Shown piece after piece: positions 12,359 through 24,804 of a stretch of DNA of 64,000 nucleotides (the first letter of the stretch is position 1; the number at the start of each line of letters is the position of its first letter). The notes below the pieces were generated by a model. The model was not told the DNA's origin and made no database searches. It saw only the letters and a program-made list of their open reading frames with translations. The position numbers and the translations under genes were made by a program. The stretch lies in the IMG/VR virus record IMGVR_UViG_3300045125_000071, positions 186,001-250,000 of that record; one strand, 5' to 3'.

Positions 12359-12389
12359 CAAATATAACATAATATAACACATAAACAAA
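12359..12389 (-). promoter_or_regulatory. Bacteroidota housekeeping-sigma promoter
   Basis: Minus strand reads TTTG-N19-TATATTTG, an exact match to the TTTG/TAnnTTTG consensus, just upstream of ORF 12111..12335. Confidence 0.75.
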
Positions 12390-12409: not shown

Positions 12410-12955
12410 TTATTTGTTTAGTTTTTCAATACATTCATCGATTTTATCCCGCAATCGACCGCCTTGCCCATTATCCCCATCGACATGGATATGCCGCCAT
12501 TTGGGGATTCTTGGTTTAAAATGTGTGAATTGATTACCAATGTTCAAGTCATCAATGGCAATCCAATTCCGTATCTTATTGTCTTTCACCCATTTGGCAA
12601 TCTGAGCAGCCCTCTCCCATTCCAATGGTGGTCGGCTCAATTTCATCCATAAGTCCATGTGGGTGGTGGTGTCAATCAAATGGTAACCTGGAATACCATA
12701 GTATTCAAAAATCCTCCTCATTTGAAGAAGACTATAGTGCATTCTCCAATCGGAACTTAATACCAGTTTGGCTTCGGTTTCATCAATAATCTTCCGAAGA
12801 GCGGCGCAATCCTCCTCAACCCATGGGTATGGTATTGTGAACATACTCGACCCTTGACTCAAAGACACACGACCCTTTCCCCATGTCAGCCATGCCAAGG
12901 GTCCGTCAATATCAATGAATATGATTTTTTGGGTTGATTGATTAATCGTTGCCAT
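12410..12955 (-). CDS. HAD-domain phosphatase (Swiss Army Knife RNA-repair type)
   Basis: IIFIDIDGPL, LVLSSDWR, WIAIDD. Confidence 0.75.
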   Translation of the reverse strand: MATINQSTQKIIFIDIDGPLAWLTWGKGRVSLSQGSSMFTIPYPWVEEDCAALRKIIDETEAKLVLSSDWRMHYSLLQMRRIFEYYGIPGYHLIDTTTHMDLWMKLSRPPLEWERAAQIAKWVKDNKIRNWIAIDDLNIGNQFTHFKPRIPKWRHIHVDGDNGQGGRLRDKIDECIEKLNK

Positions 12956-13224
12956 TAGGTTTTGCTTAACTTCTCAATGTGTTTCTTAATCCACTTGATT
13001 CTTGGTTTGATTTTATCTACTTTCCACCAATATCCTAAGAAAAAACACGAGCCCACCAAGGTTTGTTTCCATTTATGTACATTCTCAAATCACGTAATTC
13101 AGAATGTGTTATAATATTACTATAACATAAATTTAGAGACCATAAACACAAACCAAGTTCAAAATGTTTCTCGTTATCAAGCATAATCTGAAGCAACTCC
13201 TTGATGGGTCTATTCTGTTCCATG

Positions 13225-13749
13225 TTATTTGTTGTTTACGTAATCAACCAAATACTTCAAGTCATTGTAGACCTGGATGAGTCCAGCCCTATCATCCAAC
13301 AGAGCCGAAAAGAATGGTTTTGCTGATTCCCAACCCAAATTAATTCCCTTGGTATTAATACCATCGAATGGGATATTGTGTTCCTTTAAGAAGGCATCAA
13401 CATAATCCAATTCTTTATATGCTGTCCAACAAATCAACTTGCAACCGATTGCCTTCAAGTCACGGAGCAACTGACGAACTTGCTCGTAGGTTGCACCCGT
13501 CTTATGGTAGTCATGGACGGTTCCGTCAAAATCGAATCCAATTGTTAATGAACCATACTTTTTGTACTCAGCAACAAGTCTTTCGCAAGACTTGTTGTGT
13601 ATCAAAAACTCATCGGTATTGAGTGAATTGCTAACCAATTTTTCATACAACCATTTGAATGAAACATATTGGTCTTTGAAGCAACCAACCGAATTTGGAT
13701 TCTCAATTCTGAAATCCTCCCACAAATTCTCAAAATTTTTATTTAACAT
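13225..13749 (-). CDS. HAD-superfamily hydrolase
   Basis: TIGFDFDGTV, LICWTA, KPFFSALLDDRAG. Confidence 0.7.
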   Translation of the reverse strand: MLNKNFENLWEDFRIENPNSVGCFKDQYVSFKWLYEKLVSNSLNTDEFLIHNKSCERLVAEYKKYGSLTIGFDFDGTVHDYHKTGATYEQVRQLLRDLKAIGCKLICWTAYKELDYVDAFLKEHNIPFDGINTKGINLGWESAKPFFSALLDDRAGLIQVYNDLKYLVDYVNNK

Positions 13750-14530
13750 TTTCTTTCATTTTTGTTTTGATTTCTTCCAACGTTGCAAGGTAAGTAAATT
13801 GACCGTCCTTGTAGAGTGTTTTCAATTCGCTATTAACTTCATAACCCCATGAAACTCTGTCAACTAAAGGTAATCACCGTCATAGTTTTTGGTAACTTGT
13901 AACAAACCAGTCGCAGATTTCTTTGTTCCATCATCGGTAACAGGATTCTTGAAAATCTCACGACTTTCACCATTCACCTCGACATAGGTTGCTTTCATTG
14001 CAAAACCAAAAGTGTCGCGGGTATTGTACTGATATGTGAATGAACCAACACCAAATACAATGTTCGTGGATGCGAACCCTTTGGATGCAAAGTCGTTTGC
14101 AGATTTCCTCTGCCCTCTCAAGCGTAATAGAATCCCCATAAATGACTCCAATGTGCGGGTCCAATACTTTGTATCCTTGGTCATTTACGGTGCCACCAAA
14201 GACATCCCAAAGCAGTTCTACAACACCTTTGAAAGATGGGTGATTGGCATCGTAATCGTGGTACTCAAGAATCTCTGCGGTGTTGTATCCACAAACGATG
14301 TCAGCTGGGTTTCCGCTATCAGGACGAATAACCAATTTACCATCACGGGCGACAATTTTGTCTTTCAGAATCGGAAGATATTCAGTACACATCCTCCAAA
14401 TATCAAAAGTGTCGCTAACCATTGAGAAAATACCTGTTGGGAATTTGTCCAATAGTTCATTAATCCCATTCAATTCGTTGGTGACTTTCTTTTTGACGAC
14501 TCTCTTTCTTGTTTCGATAACGGTTTTCAT
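13739..14530 (-). CDS. nadV: Nampt/Namat-like enzyme, C-terminal half (separate gene; frameshifted)
   Basis: Own ATG at 14530 (MKTVIETRKRVVKKKVTNELNG). Then PTGIFSMVSDTFD, LVIRPDSG, VIYGDSIT, NIVFGVGS, TRDTFGFAMKAT, KKSATGLL. Confidence 0.85.
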
Positions 14531-14581
14531 GATTTTTTTGTTTTTAATGTCATTTGTGTAGGTAACAATATATTTATTGTT

Positions 14582-15319
14582 ATGAATCACAAACAAATAT
14601 ACCAAAATATTATTGACAAAGCAAAATCCCAAAACAGAAATAAAAAAGAATCATATTTTGAGAAACATCACATTATACCAAAAAGTGTTGGTGGTAACAA
14701 CTCAAAAGATAATTTAGTATTATTGACTGCTAAAGAACATTTTGTTTGTCATCGTCTATTATGTTTTATATATCCCGAATCCAAATCTCTTTATTTCGCA
14801 TTTTGGGCAATGTGTAATCAAGTAAAAGGTGATGTTAAACGTGATTACAGAATTAGTTCCAGGATTTATGAAAACGCAAAATTAAAATTTAAAGAAGTTA
14901 ATTCTTTGTTACATAAGGGTAAAAAACTTTCCGATGAACATATATCTAAAATCAGAGAAAGAATGTTATCTGACAAGAATCCAATGAAAAATCGGAAAGG
15001 TGAAAATAATCCTCTATATAAAAAAGAACGTAACTCAAACATTAAATCTAAAATTTCAAAAACCAAACTCTTAAACCCCACAAAAAATTGTAATTTCAAG
15101 GGGATTTACATTACTCCTTTAGGTGAATTTTTCACATCTACCCAAGCATCCGAAAAACATAATTTAGATAGGTCGGTAATAATTGAAAGATGTAAAGAAA
15201 AATCTAATAAAGTCATAACTAAAAAAAGTGTTTGTTTTTCAAAAGATTTAACATCTAACGACATTGGAAAAACATATAAAGAAATTGGTTGGTATTTTAT
15301 ACCTCAGTTTCCGAAATGA
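14582..15319 (+). mobile_element. Free-standing HNH homing endonuclease, T4 MobE-like, with NUMOD3-like tail; antisense to and inside nadV
   Basis: MNHKQIYQNIIDKAK...EKHHIIPKSVGGNNSKDNLVLLTAKEHFVCHRLL, then HKGKKLSDEHISKI and KGENNPLY. Confidence 0.88.
14594..14625 (-). promoter_or_regulatory. Consensus Bacteroidota promoter antisense within HNH gene, facing the Nampt C-half
   Basis: Minus strand TTTG-N20-TATATTTG, about 64 nt upstream of ATG 14530. Confidence 0.55.
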
Positions 15320-16121
15320 TATTTCCATTATCATCATAAACTACTTGAACTTTATACTCCTCTTCGATTTCAATTTCACTAAATTCAGTTATAGAGCACA
15401 TCACCGAATGTTCGGTTGCATTTACACTACCAACAATCGTCCCTTGTGCCCCATAGAATTTCCTTGCACCATGAATGACTGGGAGACTATCGGAGCCTGA
15501 GAATGAGATTGCGTGTCCAAGACCCGAACTAACACAAGCTTCGACAGAATCAAGTCCCCGCATGGAGAAGTCATGTGCTTGCCAATCGACAAACCATGAT
15601 TTTTCCTTGTCGGTTTTTTCTTGCCAACTTGTCAAAACCTTGCGATATTGGGCTGCGATGGTTGCGGAAGTCATTGGTTTCCAAAGCAGATTGGAAATGA
15701 TTGTTTCCAAGTAGTTGGTAATCCAATAAAAGTCTGGGTGCGTGTTGTAAATTGTCAACACAGGAACCTTGATGCCAACAATTTCACCTTCGGGAATGAT
15801 TTTGACATGAATGGGTAAATAACCCAAATCATGGAGTTTCTCGAAGTGTGAAACATCGTAATCTGTATTTAAGTACAAACTCAATTCTCTTTTCATTTCA
15901 CCACAAACCTCTTCCTTAGGTCTTGAGAAAAACTCTTTTTGGAATGCCTCATGAATTTGCATCATGACCATTTGTTGCCCGAATGAAACGACTTTATCGC
16001 AACCTTTCGGGGCGTGTTTATTGCTTCGGGGTGTGAAATTGGAGTACACCAGGGTTGTTCCTTGAGGGTACATCAAGTGGTGGCCTGTCTTATAGCCATC
16101 AGTTAAAAGCAACGGATTCAT
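15297..16121 (-). CDS. nadV: Nampt/Namat-like enzyme, N-terminal half
   Basis: LLLTDGYKTGH, VYSNFTPRS, HDFSMRG, ATEHSVMC, then a non-homologous acidic tail and a stop. Confidence 0.9.
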   Translation of the reverse strand: MNPLLLTDGYKTGHHLMYPQGTTLVYSNFTPRSNKHAPKGCDKVVSFGQQMVMMQIHEAFQKEFFSRPKEEVCGEMKRELSLYLNTDYDVSHFEKLHDLGYLPIHVKIIPEGEIVGIKVPVLTIYNTHPDFYWITNYLETIISNLLWKPMTSATIAAQYRKVLTSWQEKTDKEKSWFVDWQAHDFSMRGLDSVEACVSSGLGHAISFSGSDSLPVIHGARKFYGAQGTIVGSVNATEHSVMCSITEFSEIEIEEEYKVQVVYDDNGNIISETEV

Positions 16122-16158
16122 AATTCTTATTTTAATTGTGAGGTAAAGTTAATACATT

Positions 16159-16617
16159 TTATTGTTTGATACCCATATCAACAAATAAAACTTCAAAAGT
16201 TTCATAAACGGGTATGTTATAATACTGACAAACTATGTCAACATTCCCCTTTCTCCAAAATCCTTGTGGACAAACGACCCGAATCTTGCCAGAATGGGCG
16301 AATAATCCAAGTTCCAACAAGGATATTGGGGATTTGGTGTCAGGGGCGAAGTACATTATAATCAAGTCAGCGTTCTCCAAGGCATTTAATTCCCAGGTGA
16401 CTTGTTGAAAGAATTGCGGGTTCTCAAACTCTTGTGTCCAAGAGGAATCCCAATCGTCCCTTCTTGGGTTCAGAATGTCATATCCGCAATCACCCAAAAT
16501 GGTTTCAAGTTTTTTCTGCCAATCTTCGGCTTTACCCATTTCGATTGAGCCAGCAAGAAAGACTGACTTTCTGTCTCTGTCCCTCTTTGCAATATTCATT
16601 GGTGGTTTGTAAATCAT
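16159..16617 (-). CDS. Nucleoside 2-deoxyribosyltransferase-like protein
   Basis: VFLAGSI, LNPRR, QVTWE, SPISLLELG. Confidence 0.8.
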   Translation of the reverse strand: MIYKPPMNIAKRDRDRKSVFLAGSIEMGKAEDWQKKLETILGDCGYDILNPRRDDWDSSWTQEFENPQFFQQVTWELNALENADLIIMYFAPDTKSPISLLELGLFAHSGKIRVVCPQGFWRKGNVDIVCQYYNIPVYETFEVLFVDMGIKQ

Positions 16618-16784
16618 AGTTATTTAATTTGTTGTATAATTGTTCTATCGATTGGAAAAAGTTTTGCAATCCATCTTCGGTTTCAAAATAATAATACCCG
16701 CTTATTGTATGAAACTTTTTAACATTTATAAGATGAATGACATCGTAATATGCTGAAGTACCACTACTTAAAATGACCGAAACT

Positions 16785-17126
16785 TTAAACTCTTTCATAA
16801 TCTATGTATGTTATTTTAATTCCCTTCTTTGTTGCAAACTCAATCTCCTCTTTAACACCTCTTGATTTGTCCCAACCATCCATTTTGTATACAATCATTT
16901 CATCACATTTATCAAGAAGAGTTAAACAAAAGTTTTTCCAAGATTCCCAATCGGTTGGCATTGTTACATGACTCACCAAGGTATGGCCATATACAATTGG
17001 TGAGATGGCAACATCACCCATCGAACAAAGAAACCCAGCGAATTTGGCAACCTTTAAATAATTCTCCTCAACCACATTCGCATCTTCATGTGAATATGGT
17101 GATGATATAAAAATTAGTTTAGACAT
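16785..17126 (-). CDS. DUF1937-like (N-deoxyribosyltransferase fold) protein
   Basis: IFISSPYS, AISPI, CDEMIV, MDGWDKSRGVKEEI. Confidence 0.7.
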   Translation of the reverse strand: MSKLIFISSPYSHEDANVVEENYLKVAKFAGFLCSMGDVAISPIVYGHTLVSHVTMPTDWESWKNFCLTLLDKCDEMIVYKMDGWDKSRGVKEEIEFATKKGIKITYIDYERV

Positions 17127-17877: not shown

Positions 17878-18313
17878 TTAAAACACATTTAATTGTTTAA
17901 CAAAACTGTGAATTGTTTTATGTTTTGAAAATGTGTCAACGATTGTACCATCCTGAATATCTTTGACACTATTTGTACAAAAGATACCATCGAGGTGTTG
18001 AACCAAGAAATCAAATCCGCACTGAATATTCCATGGGTTACAACCAAATAGACCTTACCACAATTTTTTGTTTTAATATTTTTGATAACTCAATAAACGT
18101 CCGACCCCCATCAATTACGTCATCGACTATTAAACAATCCATACCATTTAAATCATCTTTATATACTATCGTTTCAATGATGTTTCCAGTAGAGATATCC
18201 CTAAGTTTATCGCACCGTATTATTTCCCCATCATATCCGATAGATTTTGCCAAATCAAAAATTTTCTTATTTGACCCCGCGTCTGGACTGATTAAATAAA
18301 ACTTGTTATTCAT
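17878..18313 (-). CDS. prs: Prs/Adps-like pyrophosphokinase, C-terminal half (separate gene; frameshifted)
   Basis: Own ATG. LISPDAG, PRT motif LIVDDVIDGGRTF, then VYLVVTHGIFS in a shifted frame. Confidence 0.85.
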
Positions 18314-18323
18314 TTTTAGAGTT

Positions 18324-19109
18324 TTATATTTGTTTTTTACGTTCTAAAAATATTGTTGATTCATCATAAAGATAATCTAATATTTTGATTACTTCTCGTT
18401 TTCCACTATATTCTAAACAAAATATTTTATCTTCACTTATGTAACCGCCAACATTTAATCGATTATTTAAATGTTTTTTTAATTCAGCGCAAAATTGTTC
18501 AGTACCTCTAAATGTTAATTTTTGTTTGTGTGTTTGTGTATTATCATTTTTATTGGTGTTAAGATACAAAGATAATCCCCCATCACCATCAAAATAACCT
18601 CTAATAAAATGTTTTATCATATTATTGGGTATAAAATTAGGAATGTAATTTTAAATGTTTTGTTTTGAACACACCTAAAATTTTTAATCTTTTGGATATC
18701 TGTTACATTGTTAATGTCCAAATATTTTTGTTTATAATTTTCACCTCTTGACGTATCAACACCTAAAGGTCTATTAGATTCCAAAACATTTTTTATTTTA
18801 ATCAATATTTCTTCATCACTTTCTTTTAGTGATAAACGAATTGATTTTCTTTTTCATTATGATATCCATCAGCATATAAAAACCCCAAAACGTATGAACT
18901 ATTCTCATTTAATTCATCAAAAAAATTCTCATTGATTGTATAAATTCTCCTACTTTCAGAAAAGTTTTTTAATTTTCTCCTCTTCTTTTCAATAAATTTC
19001 TCACCGAAGTTCTATGTATCTTATATTTCAATGAAAGTTCATTTAAACCAATACCATTTCGATAGTCATCAATTAATGTTATTTTTTCTGTATCTGTTAA
19101 TTTTCCCAT
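18324..19109 (-). mobile_element. Free-standing double-motif LAGLIDADG homing endonuclease inside prs (frameshifted)
   Basis: ATG 19109 (MGKLTDTEK, HTH-like), YVLGFLYADG, HFIRGYFDGDG, FLERK. Confidence 0.82.
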
Positions 19110-22801: not shown

Positions 22802-22885
22802 CGGAGAGGAAGGGAATCGAACCCCCAAAGCCATTACAGCCCAGCTGATTTCAAGTCAGTGTCCTCGTCCATTCGGACCCTCTCC
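22802..22885 (-). tRNA. tRNA-Ser(TGA)
   Basis: Acceptor stem GGAGAGG/CCTCTCC with discriminator G, anticodon loop CTTGAAA, long variable arm, GGTTCGATTCC T-arm; CCA not encoded. Confidence 0.92.
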
Positions 22886-24774: not shown

Positions 24775-24804
24775 CAAAAATAACAAGAATTTTTGAATAC
24801 CAAA
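24775..24804 (-). promoter_or_regulatory. Bacteroidota-type promoter
   Basis: TTTG-N18-TATTTTTG upstream of ORF 24497..24751. Confidence 0.55.

What the first reader, a model, noticed from the sequence alone, without database searches (positions are those of the whole stretch)
14530..14625. The invading HNH gene supplies an outward-facing consensus promoter for the orphaned Nampt C-half
Seen: codons 5-15 of the HNH gene read TTTG-N20-TATATTTG on the minus strand, an exact Bacteroidota consensus aimed at ATG 14530. A TATTTAT motif (14571-14577) points the other way, at the HNH ATG. Inference: overlapping promoters would express the C-half early and the nuclease late with mutual interference, which would explain how an antisense insertion is tolerated. 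Caveat: the motif could arise by chance from the QIYQNIIDKAK codons.
Basis: partly seen in the sequence, partly recalled or inferred. Interest (0 to 1): 0.6.

Follow-up and report, generated by a model that had tools for sequence, protein, structure and literature searches.

The report
Promoter-like site inside antisense homing-endonuclease gene
A selfish nuclease gene that splits a phage NAD-salvage gene (Nampt) carries, in its first codons, a textbook Bacteroidota promoter sequence aimed at the downstream gene half; it probably can fire, but sister phages with the same split lack it, so it is an optional extra and not what makes the split tolerable.

Summary
The sequence facts are correct. 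On the minus strand, TTTG (14625-14622), 20 nt and TATATTTG (14601-14594) lie in HNH codons 5-15. They sit 63 nt before the C-half ATG at 14530. TATTTAT is at 14571-14577.

The genome is a 251-kb T4-like phage that lacks Shine-Dalgarno sites and uses TTTG/TAnnTTTG promoters. A matrix built from its own promoters ranks this site 6th of about 500,000 positions and best in the window.

The motif also follows from the HNH family's conserved N-terminal peptide. QIY gives the -7 box if Gln is CAA, and A/S-K gives TTTG. Two homologues carry it with nothing to drive.

The same tail-HNH-head cassette splits Nampt in 11 distinct metagenomic phages. The motif is in 5 of 6 close relatives and 0 of 5 distant ones, all with intact C-halves. 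The promoter is therefore dispensable.

Tolerance is better explained by three things:
- the cassette's own stop, start and leader;
- charge-complementary tails (predicted complex 0.92, best control 0.00);
- read-through in a long co-directional operon.

The window's C-half "frameshifts" are homopolymer assembly errors.

The HNH-side ATATTTAT-N4-ATG matches a second, recurrent upstream element, so a convergent promoter pair is plausible. No transcription start data exist.

The parts
14594..14601 (-). -7 box TATATTTG (TAnnTTTG) of the candidate C-half promoter; it is HNH codons 5-7 (CAA ATA TA-) read backwards
   Evidence: invariant in five close relatives
14622..14625 (-). -33 box TTTG, 20 nt upstream of the -7 box (the modal spacing in this genome); it is HNH codons 14-15 (gCA AAa)
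14531..14589 (-). predicted 5' UTR of a C-half transcript (start about 14587-14590, inferred); includes the A-rich, Shine-Dalgarno-less leader before the ATG; the 51-nt spacer is conserved among cassettes
   Evidence: start position inferred from the -7 box, not measured
14570..14577 (+). ATATTTAT element 4 nt before the HNH ATG; member of a second start-proximal class of element in this genome (candidate phage-specific promoter)
   Evidence: 34 of 81 genome copies lie within 45 nt of an ORF start; 9 cases of TATTTAT-N4-ATG; conserved in cassettes
14582..15319 (+). free-standing HNH (+ weak NUMOD3) homing-endonuclease gene, antisense to the surrounding operon; its last 23 nt overlap the N-half 3' end
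15297..16121 (-). Nampt N-half (274 aa); residues 243-274 (15300-15395) form an acidic non-Nampt tail
13739..14530 (-). Nampt C-half; residues 1-20 (14471-14530) form a basic non-Nampt head; a single open frame once the two homopolymer lengths seen in Illumina data are used
14089..14091 (.). AAA run, one base too long in the window relative to an identical Illumina contig (apparent frameshift 1)
13866..13868 (.). AAA run, one base too short in the window relative to the same contig (apparent frameshift 2)

Best explanation
A mobile cassette splits the phage Nampt gene in the loop after the ATEHSVMC motif. The cassette consists of an acidic tail plus stop, an antisense HNH homing-endonuclease gene, a 51-nt spacer, and a start codon plus basic head.

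In the window's sub-lineage, the first codons of the HNH gene (Q-I-Y ... A/S-K in AT-rich codons) happen to spell a full host sigma-A (Bacteroidota) promoter on the opposite strand: TTTG-N20-TATATTTG.

The most likely reading is that host RNA polymerase recognises this site. It would then act as an auxiliary internal promoter, starting about 57-60 nt before the C-half ATG. It would top up C-half mRNA, which is otherwise made by read-through of the long leftward operon. Its footprint would cover the HNH gene's own ATATTTAT element.

The promoter is an add-on that arose from coding sequence. It is not a constitutive part of the cassette and not the reason the insertion is tolerated.

Shown: the sequence, its rank, its phylogenetic distribution, the cassette anatomy and the intact halves.
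Inferred: promoter activity, start position, timing and interference.
For: - The genome uses this promoter type. Only 18 of 234 genes have a Shine-Dalgarno-like motif, TAnnTTTG boxes pile up 21-30 nt before ATGs, and about 13 full-consensus sites are intergenic, 15-38 nt before starts.
- The candidate scores 23.6 bits, rank 6 genome-wide and best in the window. Its spacing of 20 nt is the modal spacing.
- The next strong same-strand site upstream is 10 kb away, at 24782. No terminator-like site lies between the two halves.
- The motif is retained in window, L163, L210/211, L214 and L215 (15.0-23.6 bits), although third-codon-position identity is only 62-70%. Codons 5-7 are invariant while spacer codons 10, 11 and 15 vary.
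- Independent hints that C-halves attract promoters: L163 has a canonical 21.8-bit promoter plus a 63-aa ORF inserted just upstream of its C-half. L068, which carries a different endonuclease, has a 14.0-bit site 48 nt before its C-half ATG.
- A 5' UTR of about 58 nt is normal for Bacteroides, where the mean is 52 nt (PMC7366714).
- Promoters for downstream genes embedded in endonuclease ORFs are documented in T4, in segG, segA, segE, mobB and mobC (PMC2988022).
- The halves are predicted to reassemble: ipSAE 0.92 against a best control of 0.00, runs agreeing in at least 99% of contacts, partner pLDDT at least 89. That mark was reached by 51 of 78 solved complexes and 2 of 108 mismatched pairs. 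The tail (residues 246-276) and head (residues 1-19) lie in the interface.
Against: - There is no transcription start evidence. The only RNA run holds a single 305-nt contig inside the C-half.
- The motif is largely forced by the peptide (probability about 0.33 given QIY..AK). It occurs at the family baseline rate of 3 in 61, against 2.8 expected. It is present in L087/L088 and L177, where the HNH gene is co-oriented with both neighbours.
- It is absent from L002, L165, L216, L217 and L218, and lost in L212, all of which have intact C-halves.
- It lies 63 nt from the ATG, whereas this genome's clear promoters lie 14-38 nt away.
- The synonymous-site signal rests on 3-4 sites (p about 0.06) and may simply reflect descent.
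Confidence: 0.5

Rival explanations
1. The motif is a coding by-product with no meaningful promoter role. It is a side effect of the conserved HNH N-terminal peptide in an AT-rich genome. The C-half is transcribed only by read-through from promoters far upstream in the leftward operon, and it is translated from its own cassette-supplied start.
For: - Family baseline: 3 of 61 N-termini carry both boxes, against 2.8 expected.
- L087/L088 and L177 carry the same motif with no divergent gene to drive.
- Five distant cassettes and L212 lack it yet keep intact C-halves.
- The bare consensus is at chance level in the window.
- Its distance to the ATG is atypical.
- There is no terminator between the halves.
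Against: A perfect -33/-7 pair at the optimal spacing, scoring with the genome's strongest promoters, would be expected to bind host polymerase whatever its origin. It is retained in 5 of 6 clade members with invariant box codons. L163 and L068 show other promoter-like sites ahead of their C-halves.
Confidence: 0.35
2. The site is active, but its main effect is to silence the endonuclease. A convergent host-type promoter inside the HNH 5' end would occlude or collide with the ATATTTAT-driven HNH transcription and produce antisense RNA over the HNH start. Nuclease expression would stay off until host sigma-A transcription declines. Any C-half output would be secondary.
For: The geometry fits: the predicted starts are about 7 nt apart and convergent, and each promoter lies in the other's transcribed leader. 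Phage homing endonucleases are typically tightly repressed and expressed late (PMC2988022).
Against: Read-through of the leftward operon already gives antisense transcription across the whole HNH gene, so an extra promoter is not needed for that. Distant cassettes lack it. There are no expression data.
Confidence: 0.1
3. The C-half is a decaying pseudogene left by the insertion, so any promoter in front of it is irrelevant.
For: The window sequence itself has two frame breaks in the C-half.
Against: Both breaks are one-base differences in AAA runs that are absent from an otherwise identical Illumina contig. The neighbouring PRPP-synthetase gene shows similar breaks, and apparent coding density is only 68%, which points to an indel-prone assembly. 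All 10 other cassettes have intact C-halves of 259-302 aa.
Confidence: 0.03

Closest known systems
Aeromonas phage Aeh1 nrdA-a / mobE / nrdA-b 'genes in pieces' (Friedrich 2007; Crona 2011, PMC3045599)
   Same: A free-standing HNH endonuclease gene splits a conserved nucleotide-metabolism gene into two ORFs. Non-homologous C- and N-terminal tails of opposite charge arrive with the insertion. Both halves are retained.
   Different: Here the endonuclease gene is antisense to the split gene. The target is Nampt, not RNR. The charges are reversed (acidic on the N-half, basic on the C-half). The cassette is found in at least 11 phages and in two divergent Nampt lineages. Function of the tails is predicted only.
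Promoters for downstream phage genes embedded in T4 seg/mob endonuclease ORFs (segG and gene 32; segA, segE, mobB, mobC; review PMC2988022)
   Same: A promoter serving the host gene downstream of the insertion lies inside the endonuclease coding sequence. Such a promoter would favour retention of the element.
   Different: The T4 cases are co-oriented and experimentally mapped. Here the site is on the antisense strand of the first 15 codons, is of Bacteroidota sigma-A type, is unmapped, and is present in only part of the cassette family.
T4 segD, the one antisense free-standing endonuclease gene in T4 (PMC2988022)
   Same: The endonuclease gene is oriented against the surrounding operon.
   Different: segD lies between genes rather than inside one. 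No segD promoter was found, and none is reported there as serving a neighbour. The HNH gene here has a conserved ATATTTAT element of its own.
'Fractured genes' with split inteins and a free-standing endonuclease (Dassa 2009, PMC2677866)
   Same: [quoted passage not shown] Complementary charges are proposed to guide reassembly. The authors also asked where the downstream half gets its transcription signals.
   Different: There is no intein here: the tails are about 20-32 aa and lack intein motifs. In the described fractured genes all three ORFs are on the same strand.
Bacteroidota sigma-A (sigmaABfr) promoters, TTTG (-33) / TAnnTTTG (-7) (PMC7366714 and references therein)
   Same: Both boxes are exact, the spacing is 20 nt, and the implied 5' UTR length is within the normal range.
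   Different: The site lies inside coding DNA of a phage selfish element. Activity has not been tested.

Membership tests
Bacteroidota sigma-A-type promoter | -7 box TAnnTTTG | tested here: met
   TATATTTG at 14601-14594 (-)
Bacteroidota sigma-A-type promoter | -33 box TTTG about 19-21 nt upstream | tested here: met
   TTTG at 14625-14622 with N20, the modal spacing among this genome's own promoters
Bacteroidota sigma-A-type promoter | The organism uses this promoter type | tested here: met
   Start-proximal enrichment, a cluster of intergenic full-consensus sites at genome 152-181 kb, and no Shine-Dalgarno usage
Bacteroidota sigma-A-type promoter | Placement typical for a gene start | tested here: inconclusive
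   63 nt before the ATG and inside an antisense ORF. Clear promoters here lie 14-38 nt before an ATG in non-coding DNA. The distance is within the published 5' UTR range (PMC7366714).
Bacteroidota sigma-A-type promoter | Conserved at the orthologous place | tested here: inconclusive
   Present in 5 of 6 close cassettes and 0 of 5 distant ones
Bacteroidota sigma-A-type promoter | Transcription start mapped a few nt downstream | not testable with these tools
   The only RNA run gives one 305-nt contig inside the C-half
Free-standing HNH homing endonuclease (MobE / I-HmuI-like) | HNH catalytic motif | tested here: met
   PF01844 at 28.4 bits, above the 21.4-bit cut-off
Free-standing HNH homing endonuclease (MobE / I-HmuI-like) | NUMOD-type DNA-binding module | tested here: inconclusive
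   NUMOD3 at 18.3 bits, below the 20.4-bit cut-off
Free-standing HNH homing endonuclease (MobE / I-HmuI-like) | Presence/absence polymorphism at a conserved target gene | tested here: met
   Nearly all of the 80 related Nampt loci are intact, 486-568 aa. HNH homologues lie inside or directly beside Nampt in 13 distinct loci.
Free-standing HNH homing endonuclease (MobE / I-HmuI-like) | Site-specific cleavage and homing | not testable with these tools
   Needs enzyme assays or co-infection crosses
Free-standing HNH homing endonuclease (MobE / I-HmuI-like) | Orthology to T4/Aeh1 MobE specifically | not tested
   The best isolate hits are annotated homing endonucleases at 28-31% identity. Only family-level membership is claimed.
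Genes-in-pieces split by a free-standing endonuclease (Aeh1 nrdA type) | One gene appears as two ORFs, broken where relatives are continuous | tested here: met
   Alignment with intact relatives; the break lies between ATEHSVMC and GTFxxLL
Genes-in-pieces split by a free-standing endonuclease (Aeh1 nrdA type) | Both halves kept intact | tested here: met
   True in 10 other cassettes, and in the window after the homopolymer correction seen in reads
Genes-in-pieces split by a free-standing endonuclease (Aeh1 nrdA type) | Insertion-derived tails of opposite charge | tested here: met
   Acidic N-tail and basic C-head. In L165 they are more conserved (41-57%) than the N-terminal Nampt body (32-33%). 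They lie in the predicted interface.
Genes-in-pieces split by a free-standing endonuclease (Aeh1 nrdA type) | All three ORFs on one strand, as in the described cases | tested here: not met
   The HNH gene is antisense in all 11 cassettes
Genes-in-pieces split by a free-standing endonuclease (Aeh1 nrdA type) | Reassembled enzyme is active | not testable with these tools
   There is only a structure-model score: 0.92 against a best control of 0.00
Group I intron or intein insertion | Ribozyme core or intein splicing motifs | tested here: not met
   No Rfam intron in the window. The halves have their own stop and start, and the tails of about 20-32 aa are too short for intein halves.

The most novel reading that the evidence does not exclude
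The antisense HNH cassette carries a selected, convergent pair of promoters of two temporal classes within 60 bp. One is a host sigma-A promoter written in the nuclease's own first codons, which feeds the downstream Nampt half early. The other is a phage-specific ATATTTAT promoter for the nuclease. The two would exclude each other. Because the embedded promoter overlaps essential nuclease codons, it would tie expression of a useful host gene to retention of the selfish element, as an addiction-like anchor.
Probability: 0.2. Interest if true: 0.65.

Novelty: new variant of a known kind. Interest (0 to 1): 0.45.

Why it matters
Homing endonuclease genes persist only if they do not cripple the genes they invade. 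The described solutions are introns, inteins, intergenic insertion, and one studied "genes-in-pieces" case (Aeh1 NrdA), all co-oriented with the host gene.

This locus shows a widespread antisense version in uncultured T4-like phages that use Bacteroidota-type expression signals. The same Nampt site is also hit by a second, unrelated endonuclease.

If the embedded promoter is active, it extends the T4 "embedded promoter favours retention" idea to the opposite strand and to Bacteroidota-type transcription. It would also give a compact natural example of overlapping convergent promoters of two classes.

For annotation, it shows that split Nampt ORFs in these phages are functional pieces, not pseudogenes. 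It also shows that this assembly's frameshifts are artefacts.

Tried and rejected
- Megablast of the locus against isolated phages found nothing.
- Rfam found no intron, only one tRNA at 22802-22885.
- The sigma-70 and terminator scan gave nothing informative except that no terminator lies between the halves.
- A Bacteroidota-type promoter for the HNH gene on the plus strand is rejected: the best site scores 8.0 bits and has no -33 box at usable spacing.
- A T4-type TATAAATA late box on the C-half strand of the spacer was considered, because it is exact in several cassettes. It is not start-proximal in this genome (9 of 77 copies). Its reverse complement family ATATTTAT is (34 of 81), so the signal belongs to the HNH strand.
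- PHROG annotation of genes behind either promoter class was mostly "unknown", so timing classes could not be assigned. Only a baseplate wedge subunit and a tRNA nucleotidyltransferase were named among the ATATTTAT genes.
- The tail-sheath gene start could not be defined because of frame breaks.
- The predicted 5' UTR hairpin is not significant (z = -1.7) and is not conserved.
- The pseudogene reading of the C-half is rejected by reads.
- The RNA run gave no start, strand or level information.
- L002's 10.8-kb locus has no site of 14 bits or more anywhere. Its lack of the motif is therefore informative only together with the other four distant cassettes.
Full report
**The sequence itself**

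The window is bases 186001-250000 of a 251,358-bp linear IMG/VR virus record. Its GC content is 31% and it is estimated to be about 75% complete.

Around the finding, the minus strand carries a Nampt N-half (15297-16121, 274 aa; Pfam NAMPT_N plus the start of NAPRTase). It also carries a Nampt C-part that starts at ATG 14530. Between them, on the plus strand, lies a 245-aa HNH (+ weak NUMOD3) ORF at 14582-15319.

HNH codons 5-15 (CAA ATA TAC CAA AAT ATT ATT GAC AAA GCA AAA) read on the minus strand as TTTG (14625-14622), N20, TATATTTG (14601-14594). This is 63 nt before the ATG at 14530. TATTTAT is at 14571-14577 on the plus strand.

**The C-half is not a wreck**

In the window the C-part is in three frames, with breaks near 14090 and 13866.

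One aquatic metatranscriptome run holds a 305-nt Illumina contig identical to 13806-14110, apart from one A fewer in the AAA run at 14089-14091 and one A more at 13866-13868. With those run lengths the C-half is one open frame (13739-14530) that aligns end to end with intact relatives.

The neighbouring PRPP-synthetase gene shows similar frame breaks, and crude coding density is only 68%. The assembly is indel-prone and the gene is intact. The contig cannot show strand, start or level.

**What kind of genome this is**

Only 18 of 234 ORF starts have a Shine-Dalgarno-like tetramer, and the leaders are A-rich. This is the Bacteroidota pattern (PMC6847099 abstract).

TAnnTTTG boxes pile up 21-30 nt before ATGs. 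Of 35 full TTTG-N19-21-TAnnTTTG sites, about 13 are intergenic and lie 15-38 nt before a start. Most of these cluster at genome 152-181 kb. About 11 others lie in coding DNA far from any start. This is the sigmaABfr consensus (PMC7366714).

The genome has a Gp23-family major capsid gene, so it is a T4-like jumbo phage. No isolate is close.

**How good the site is**

The bare consensus is not special: 6 matches in the window against 3.26 +/- 1.67 in shuffles.

A two-block matrix trained on 15 of the genome's own start-proximal promoters gives the candidate 23.6 bits. That is rank 6 of 502,626 positions and the best in the window. Sixteen sites reach 20 bits, and all are non-coding except the candidate and one inside a doubtful 72-aa ORF.

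On the minus strand between 14531 and 25000, the only other sites of 10 bits or more are a shifted shadow at 14609 (16.4), 15043 (11.8) and 24782 (20.4). There is no terminator-like hairpin on the minus strand between the two halves.

**Why chance is still on the table**

The HNH family has a conserved N-terminus, MN[YH]xxIYxxIIxxAK. Q-I-Y yields the -7 box whenever Gln is CAA (usage 0.82). A-K yields TTTG whenever Ala is GCA (0.40). Given the peptide, the motif has a probability of about 0.33.

In 80 homologous loci, 16 have their best antisense hit at exactly this offset and spacing. Among 61 distinct N-termini, 12 carry the -7 box, 14 the -33 box and 3 both, against 2.8 expected under independence.

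Two of those three (L087/L088 and L177) sit co-oriented between two large genes, so the motif there points at nothing.

**The cassette is widespread**

Nearly all of the 80 related Nampt genes are intact, at 486-568 aa.

The same split, with an N-half of 274-286 aa, an antisense HNH gene overlapping its 3' end, and an intact C-half of 259-302 aa, occurs in 11 distinct sequences. These are the window, L163, L210/211, L212/213, L214, L215, L216, L217, L218, L002 and L165. The two divergent ATGs lie 31-93 nt apart, except in L163 (353 nt), which has an extra ORF there.

L165 has a divergent Nampt (32-33% identity in the N body), yet its tail and head are 41-57% identical to the others. The tail-HNH-head unit therefore moves as a whole.

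HNH homologues also sit free-standing next to intact Nampt genes: upstream and antisense in L084, downstream and in sense in L164. L068 has a different, NUMOD3-bearing endonuclease-like ORF, also antisense, at nearly the same Nampt site.

**Distribution of the promoter motif**

| Group | Locus | Score (bits) |
|---|---|---|
| Close clade (HNH 78-83% identical) | window | 23.6 |
| Close clade | L210/211 | 21.7 |
| Close clade | L215 | 21.7 |
| Close clade | L163 | 17.7 |
| Close clade | L214 | 15.0 |
| Close clade, motif lost (QIY>LLY) | L212 | 12.9 at the site (nearby shadow site 14.1) |
| Distant cassette | L216 | 2.8 |
| Distant cassette | L217 | 9.0 |
| Distant cassette | L218 | 9.4 |
| Distant cassette | L002 | 2.9 |
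| Distant cassette | L165 | 8.0 |

The Ala14>Ser change in the clade uses TCA, which keeps CAAA, but this is simply the one-step mutation from GCA.

In the five motif-bearing genes, 65 of 162 same-residue degenerate codons are invariant (0.40). Codons 5, 6 and 7 are all invariant, while spacer codons 10, 11 and 15 all vary. This is suggestive (about 0.06) but rests on too few sites.

Related loci do use this promoter type elsewhere, for example L214 at 1246 and L217 at 1540. It is rare in them, with 10 sites of 18 bits or more in 1.44 million positions.

Two other arrangements hint that a promoter ahead of the C-half is useful. L163 has a 63-aa ORF with a canonical 21.8-bit promoter inserted between the HNH start and the C-half. 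L068 has TTTG-N19-TATATTTA (14.0 bits) 48 nt before its C-half ATG.

**The other strand**

No Bacteroidota-type site points at the HNH gene (best 8.0 bits).

Genome-wide, TATTTAT is the most start-proximal of all 21 permutations of its letters: 23% of copies lie within 30 nt of a first-ATG ORF start, against 3-12% for the others. For ATATTTAT, 34 of 81 copies lie within 45 nt. The modal spacing is 4 nt, with 9 cases.

It precedes a baseplate-wedge gene and the 237-aa ORF immediately upstream of the capsid gene. It is conserved before the HNH gene in the close clade (4 nt from the ATG) and in L216 and L217 (6 nt).

It is probably a second, phage-specific promoter class, possibly late. This parallels the late-promoter control of T4 endonucleases (PMC2988022). 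The timing is inferred, not shown.

**Mechanism**

If both sites fire, the C-half transcript starts at about 14589 going left and the HNH transcript at about 14582 going right. Each promoter then lies in the other's leader, so polymerases would exclude each other.

Tolerance of the insertion does not depend on it. The cassette supplies the stop, the start and an A-rich leader. It also supplies an acidic tail (SITEFSEIEIEEEYKVQVVYDDNGNIISETEV) and a basic head (MKTVIETRKRVVKKKVTNEL).

For the L163 halves, the structure model gives ipSAE 0.92 against a best control of 0.00. The three runs agree in at least 99% of contacts and the partner pLDDT is at least 89. That mark was reached by 51 of 78 solved complexes and by 2 of 108 mismatched pairs. 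Tail residues 246-276 and head residues 1-19 lie in the interface. Because Nampt structures are known, this pass shows likeness rather than proof of binding.

This mirrors the Aeh1 NrdA tails (PMC3045599). Read-through of the long leftward operon can supply mRNA in the cassettes that lack the motif.

**Comparison and verdict**

Promoters for downstream genes embedded in endonuclease ORFs are known in T4 (segG and gene 32, among others). All T4 endonuclease genes except segD are co-oriented with their neighbours (PMC2988022). The described genes-in-pieces and fractured genes are all on one strand (PMC3045599, PMC2677866).

This locus is an antisense variant of those known kinds.

My estimates are:
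- about 0.5 that the site is an active auxiliary promoter;
- about 0.35 that it is a silent coding by-product;
- about 0.1 that its main role is to silence the endonuclease.

I left out no step for safety reasons.

Noticed in passing
window 13866-13868 and 14089-14091; also 17878-18313: One-base homopolymer differences from an identical Illumina contig break the Nampt C-half frame. The PRPP-synthetase gene next door shows similar frame breaks, and crude coding density is only 68%. The assembly looks indel-prone, so many 'short ORFs' and 'gaps' in this record are probably artefacts.
   Followed up: partly
genome-wide; in the window e.g. 14570-14577 (+), 31080 (-), 36944 (-), 45259 (-), 51557 (+): A second start-proximal element, ATATTTAT[A/T], lies 4-24 nt (mode 4) before many ORF starts. 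These include a baseplate-wedge gene and the ORF upstream of the Gp23 capsid gene. It is largely segregated from the TTTG/TAnnTTTG promoter cluster at genome 152-181 kb. It is a candidate phage-specific (late?) promoter, possibly giving near-leaderless mRNAs.
   Followed up: partly
window 18038-18620 (-); L210 3973-5727: The PRPP-synthetase (Pribosyltran) gene 2 kb upstream is also interrupted, by a co-oriented LAGLIDADG-like ORF ('IRGYFDGDGG'; a faint LAGLIDADG_3 hit in L210/L211). This may be a second endonuclease-split gene in the same NAD/nucleotide-salvage cluster.
   Followed up: no
L068 2661-5083: A different endonuclease-like ORF (264 aa, NUMOD3 motif, no HNH hit) sits antisense at nearly the same Nampt loop, with its own unrelated tails. 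This is an independent invasion of the same site in the same orientation.
   Followed up: partly
L084 1445-3726; L164 231-2345: HNH homologues (49-53% identical) lie free-standing directly beside intact Nampt genes: upstream and antisense in L084, downstream and in sense in L164. The family appears to be Nampt-associated, much as mobE is nrd-associated.
   Followed up: partly
L163 2170-2400 (-): A 63-aa ORF of unknown function, with a canonical TTTG-N19-TATATTTG promoter 26 nt before its ATG, is inserted between the HNH start and the C-half.
   Followed up: partly
genome 160-170 kb (L208), e.g. upstream of the starts at 163214, 165678, 166242 and 167410: Several strong early-type promoters share an extra 'TTAAC' motif (ATTTTAACA / AATTAAC) about 10 nt upstream of the -33 TTTG. 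GGGTTAACCC precedes the promoter at window 12389.
   Followed up: no
window 12359-12389 (-) and about 24782 (-): These are the only other strong host-type promoter matches on the minus strand of this part of the window (23.1 and 20.4 bits). Both are intergenic and at normal distance from a start.
   Followed up: yes
window 22802-22885 (-): A single tRNA gene (Rfam, 32.9 bits).
   Followed up: no
window 12410-17126 (-): The Nampt gene sits in a nucleotide/NAD-salvage block. It contains a HAD_SAK_2 phosphatase-like ORF, a nucleoside 2-deoxyribosyltransferase-like ORF (PF15891), a DUF1937 ORF and PRPP synthetase.
   Followed up: partly
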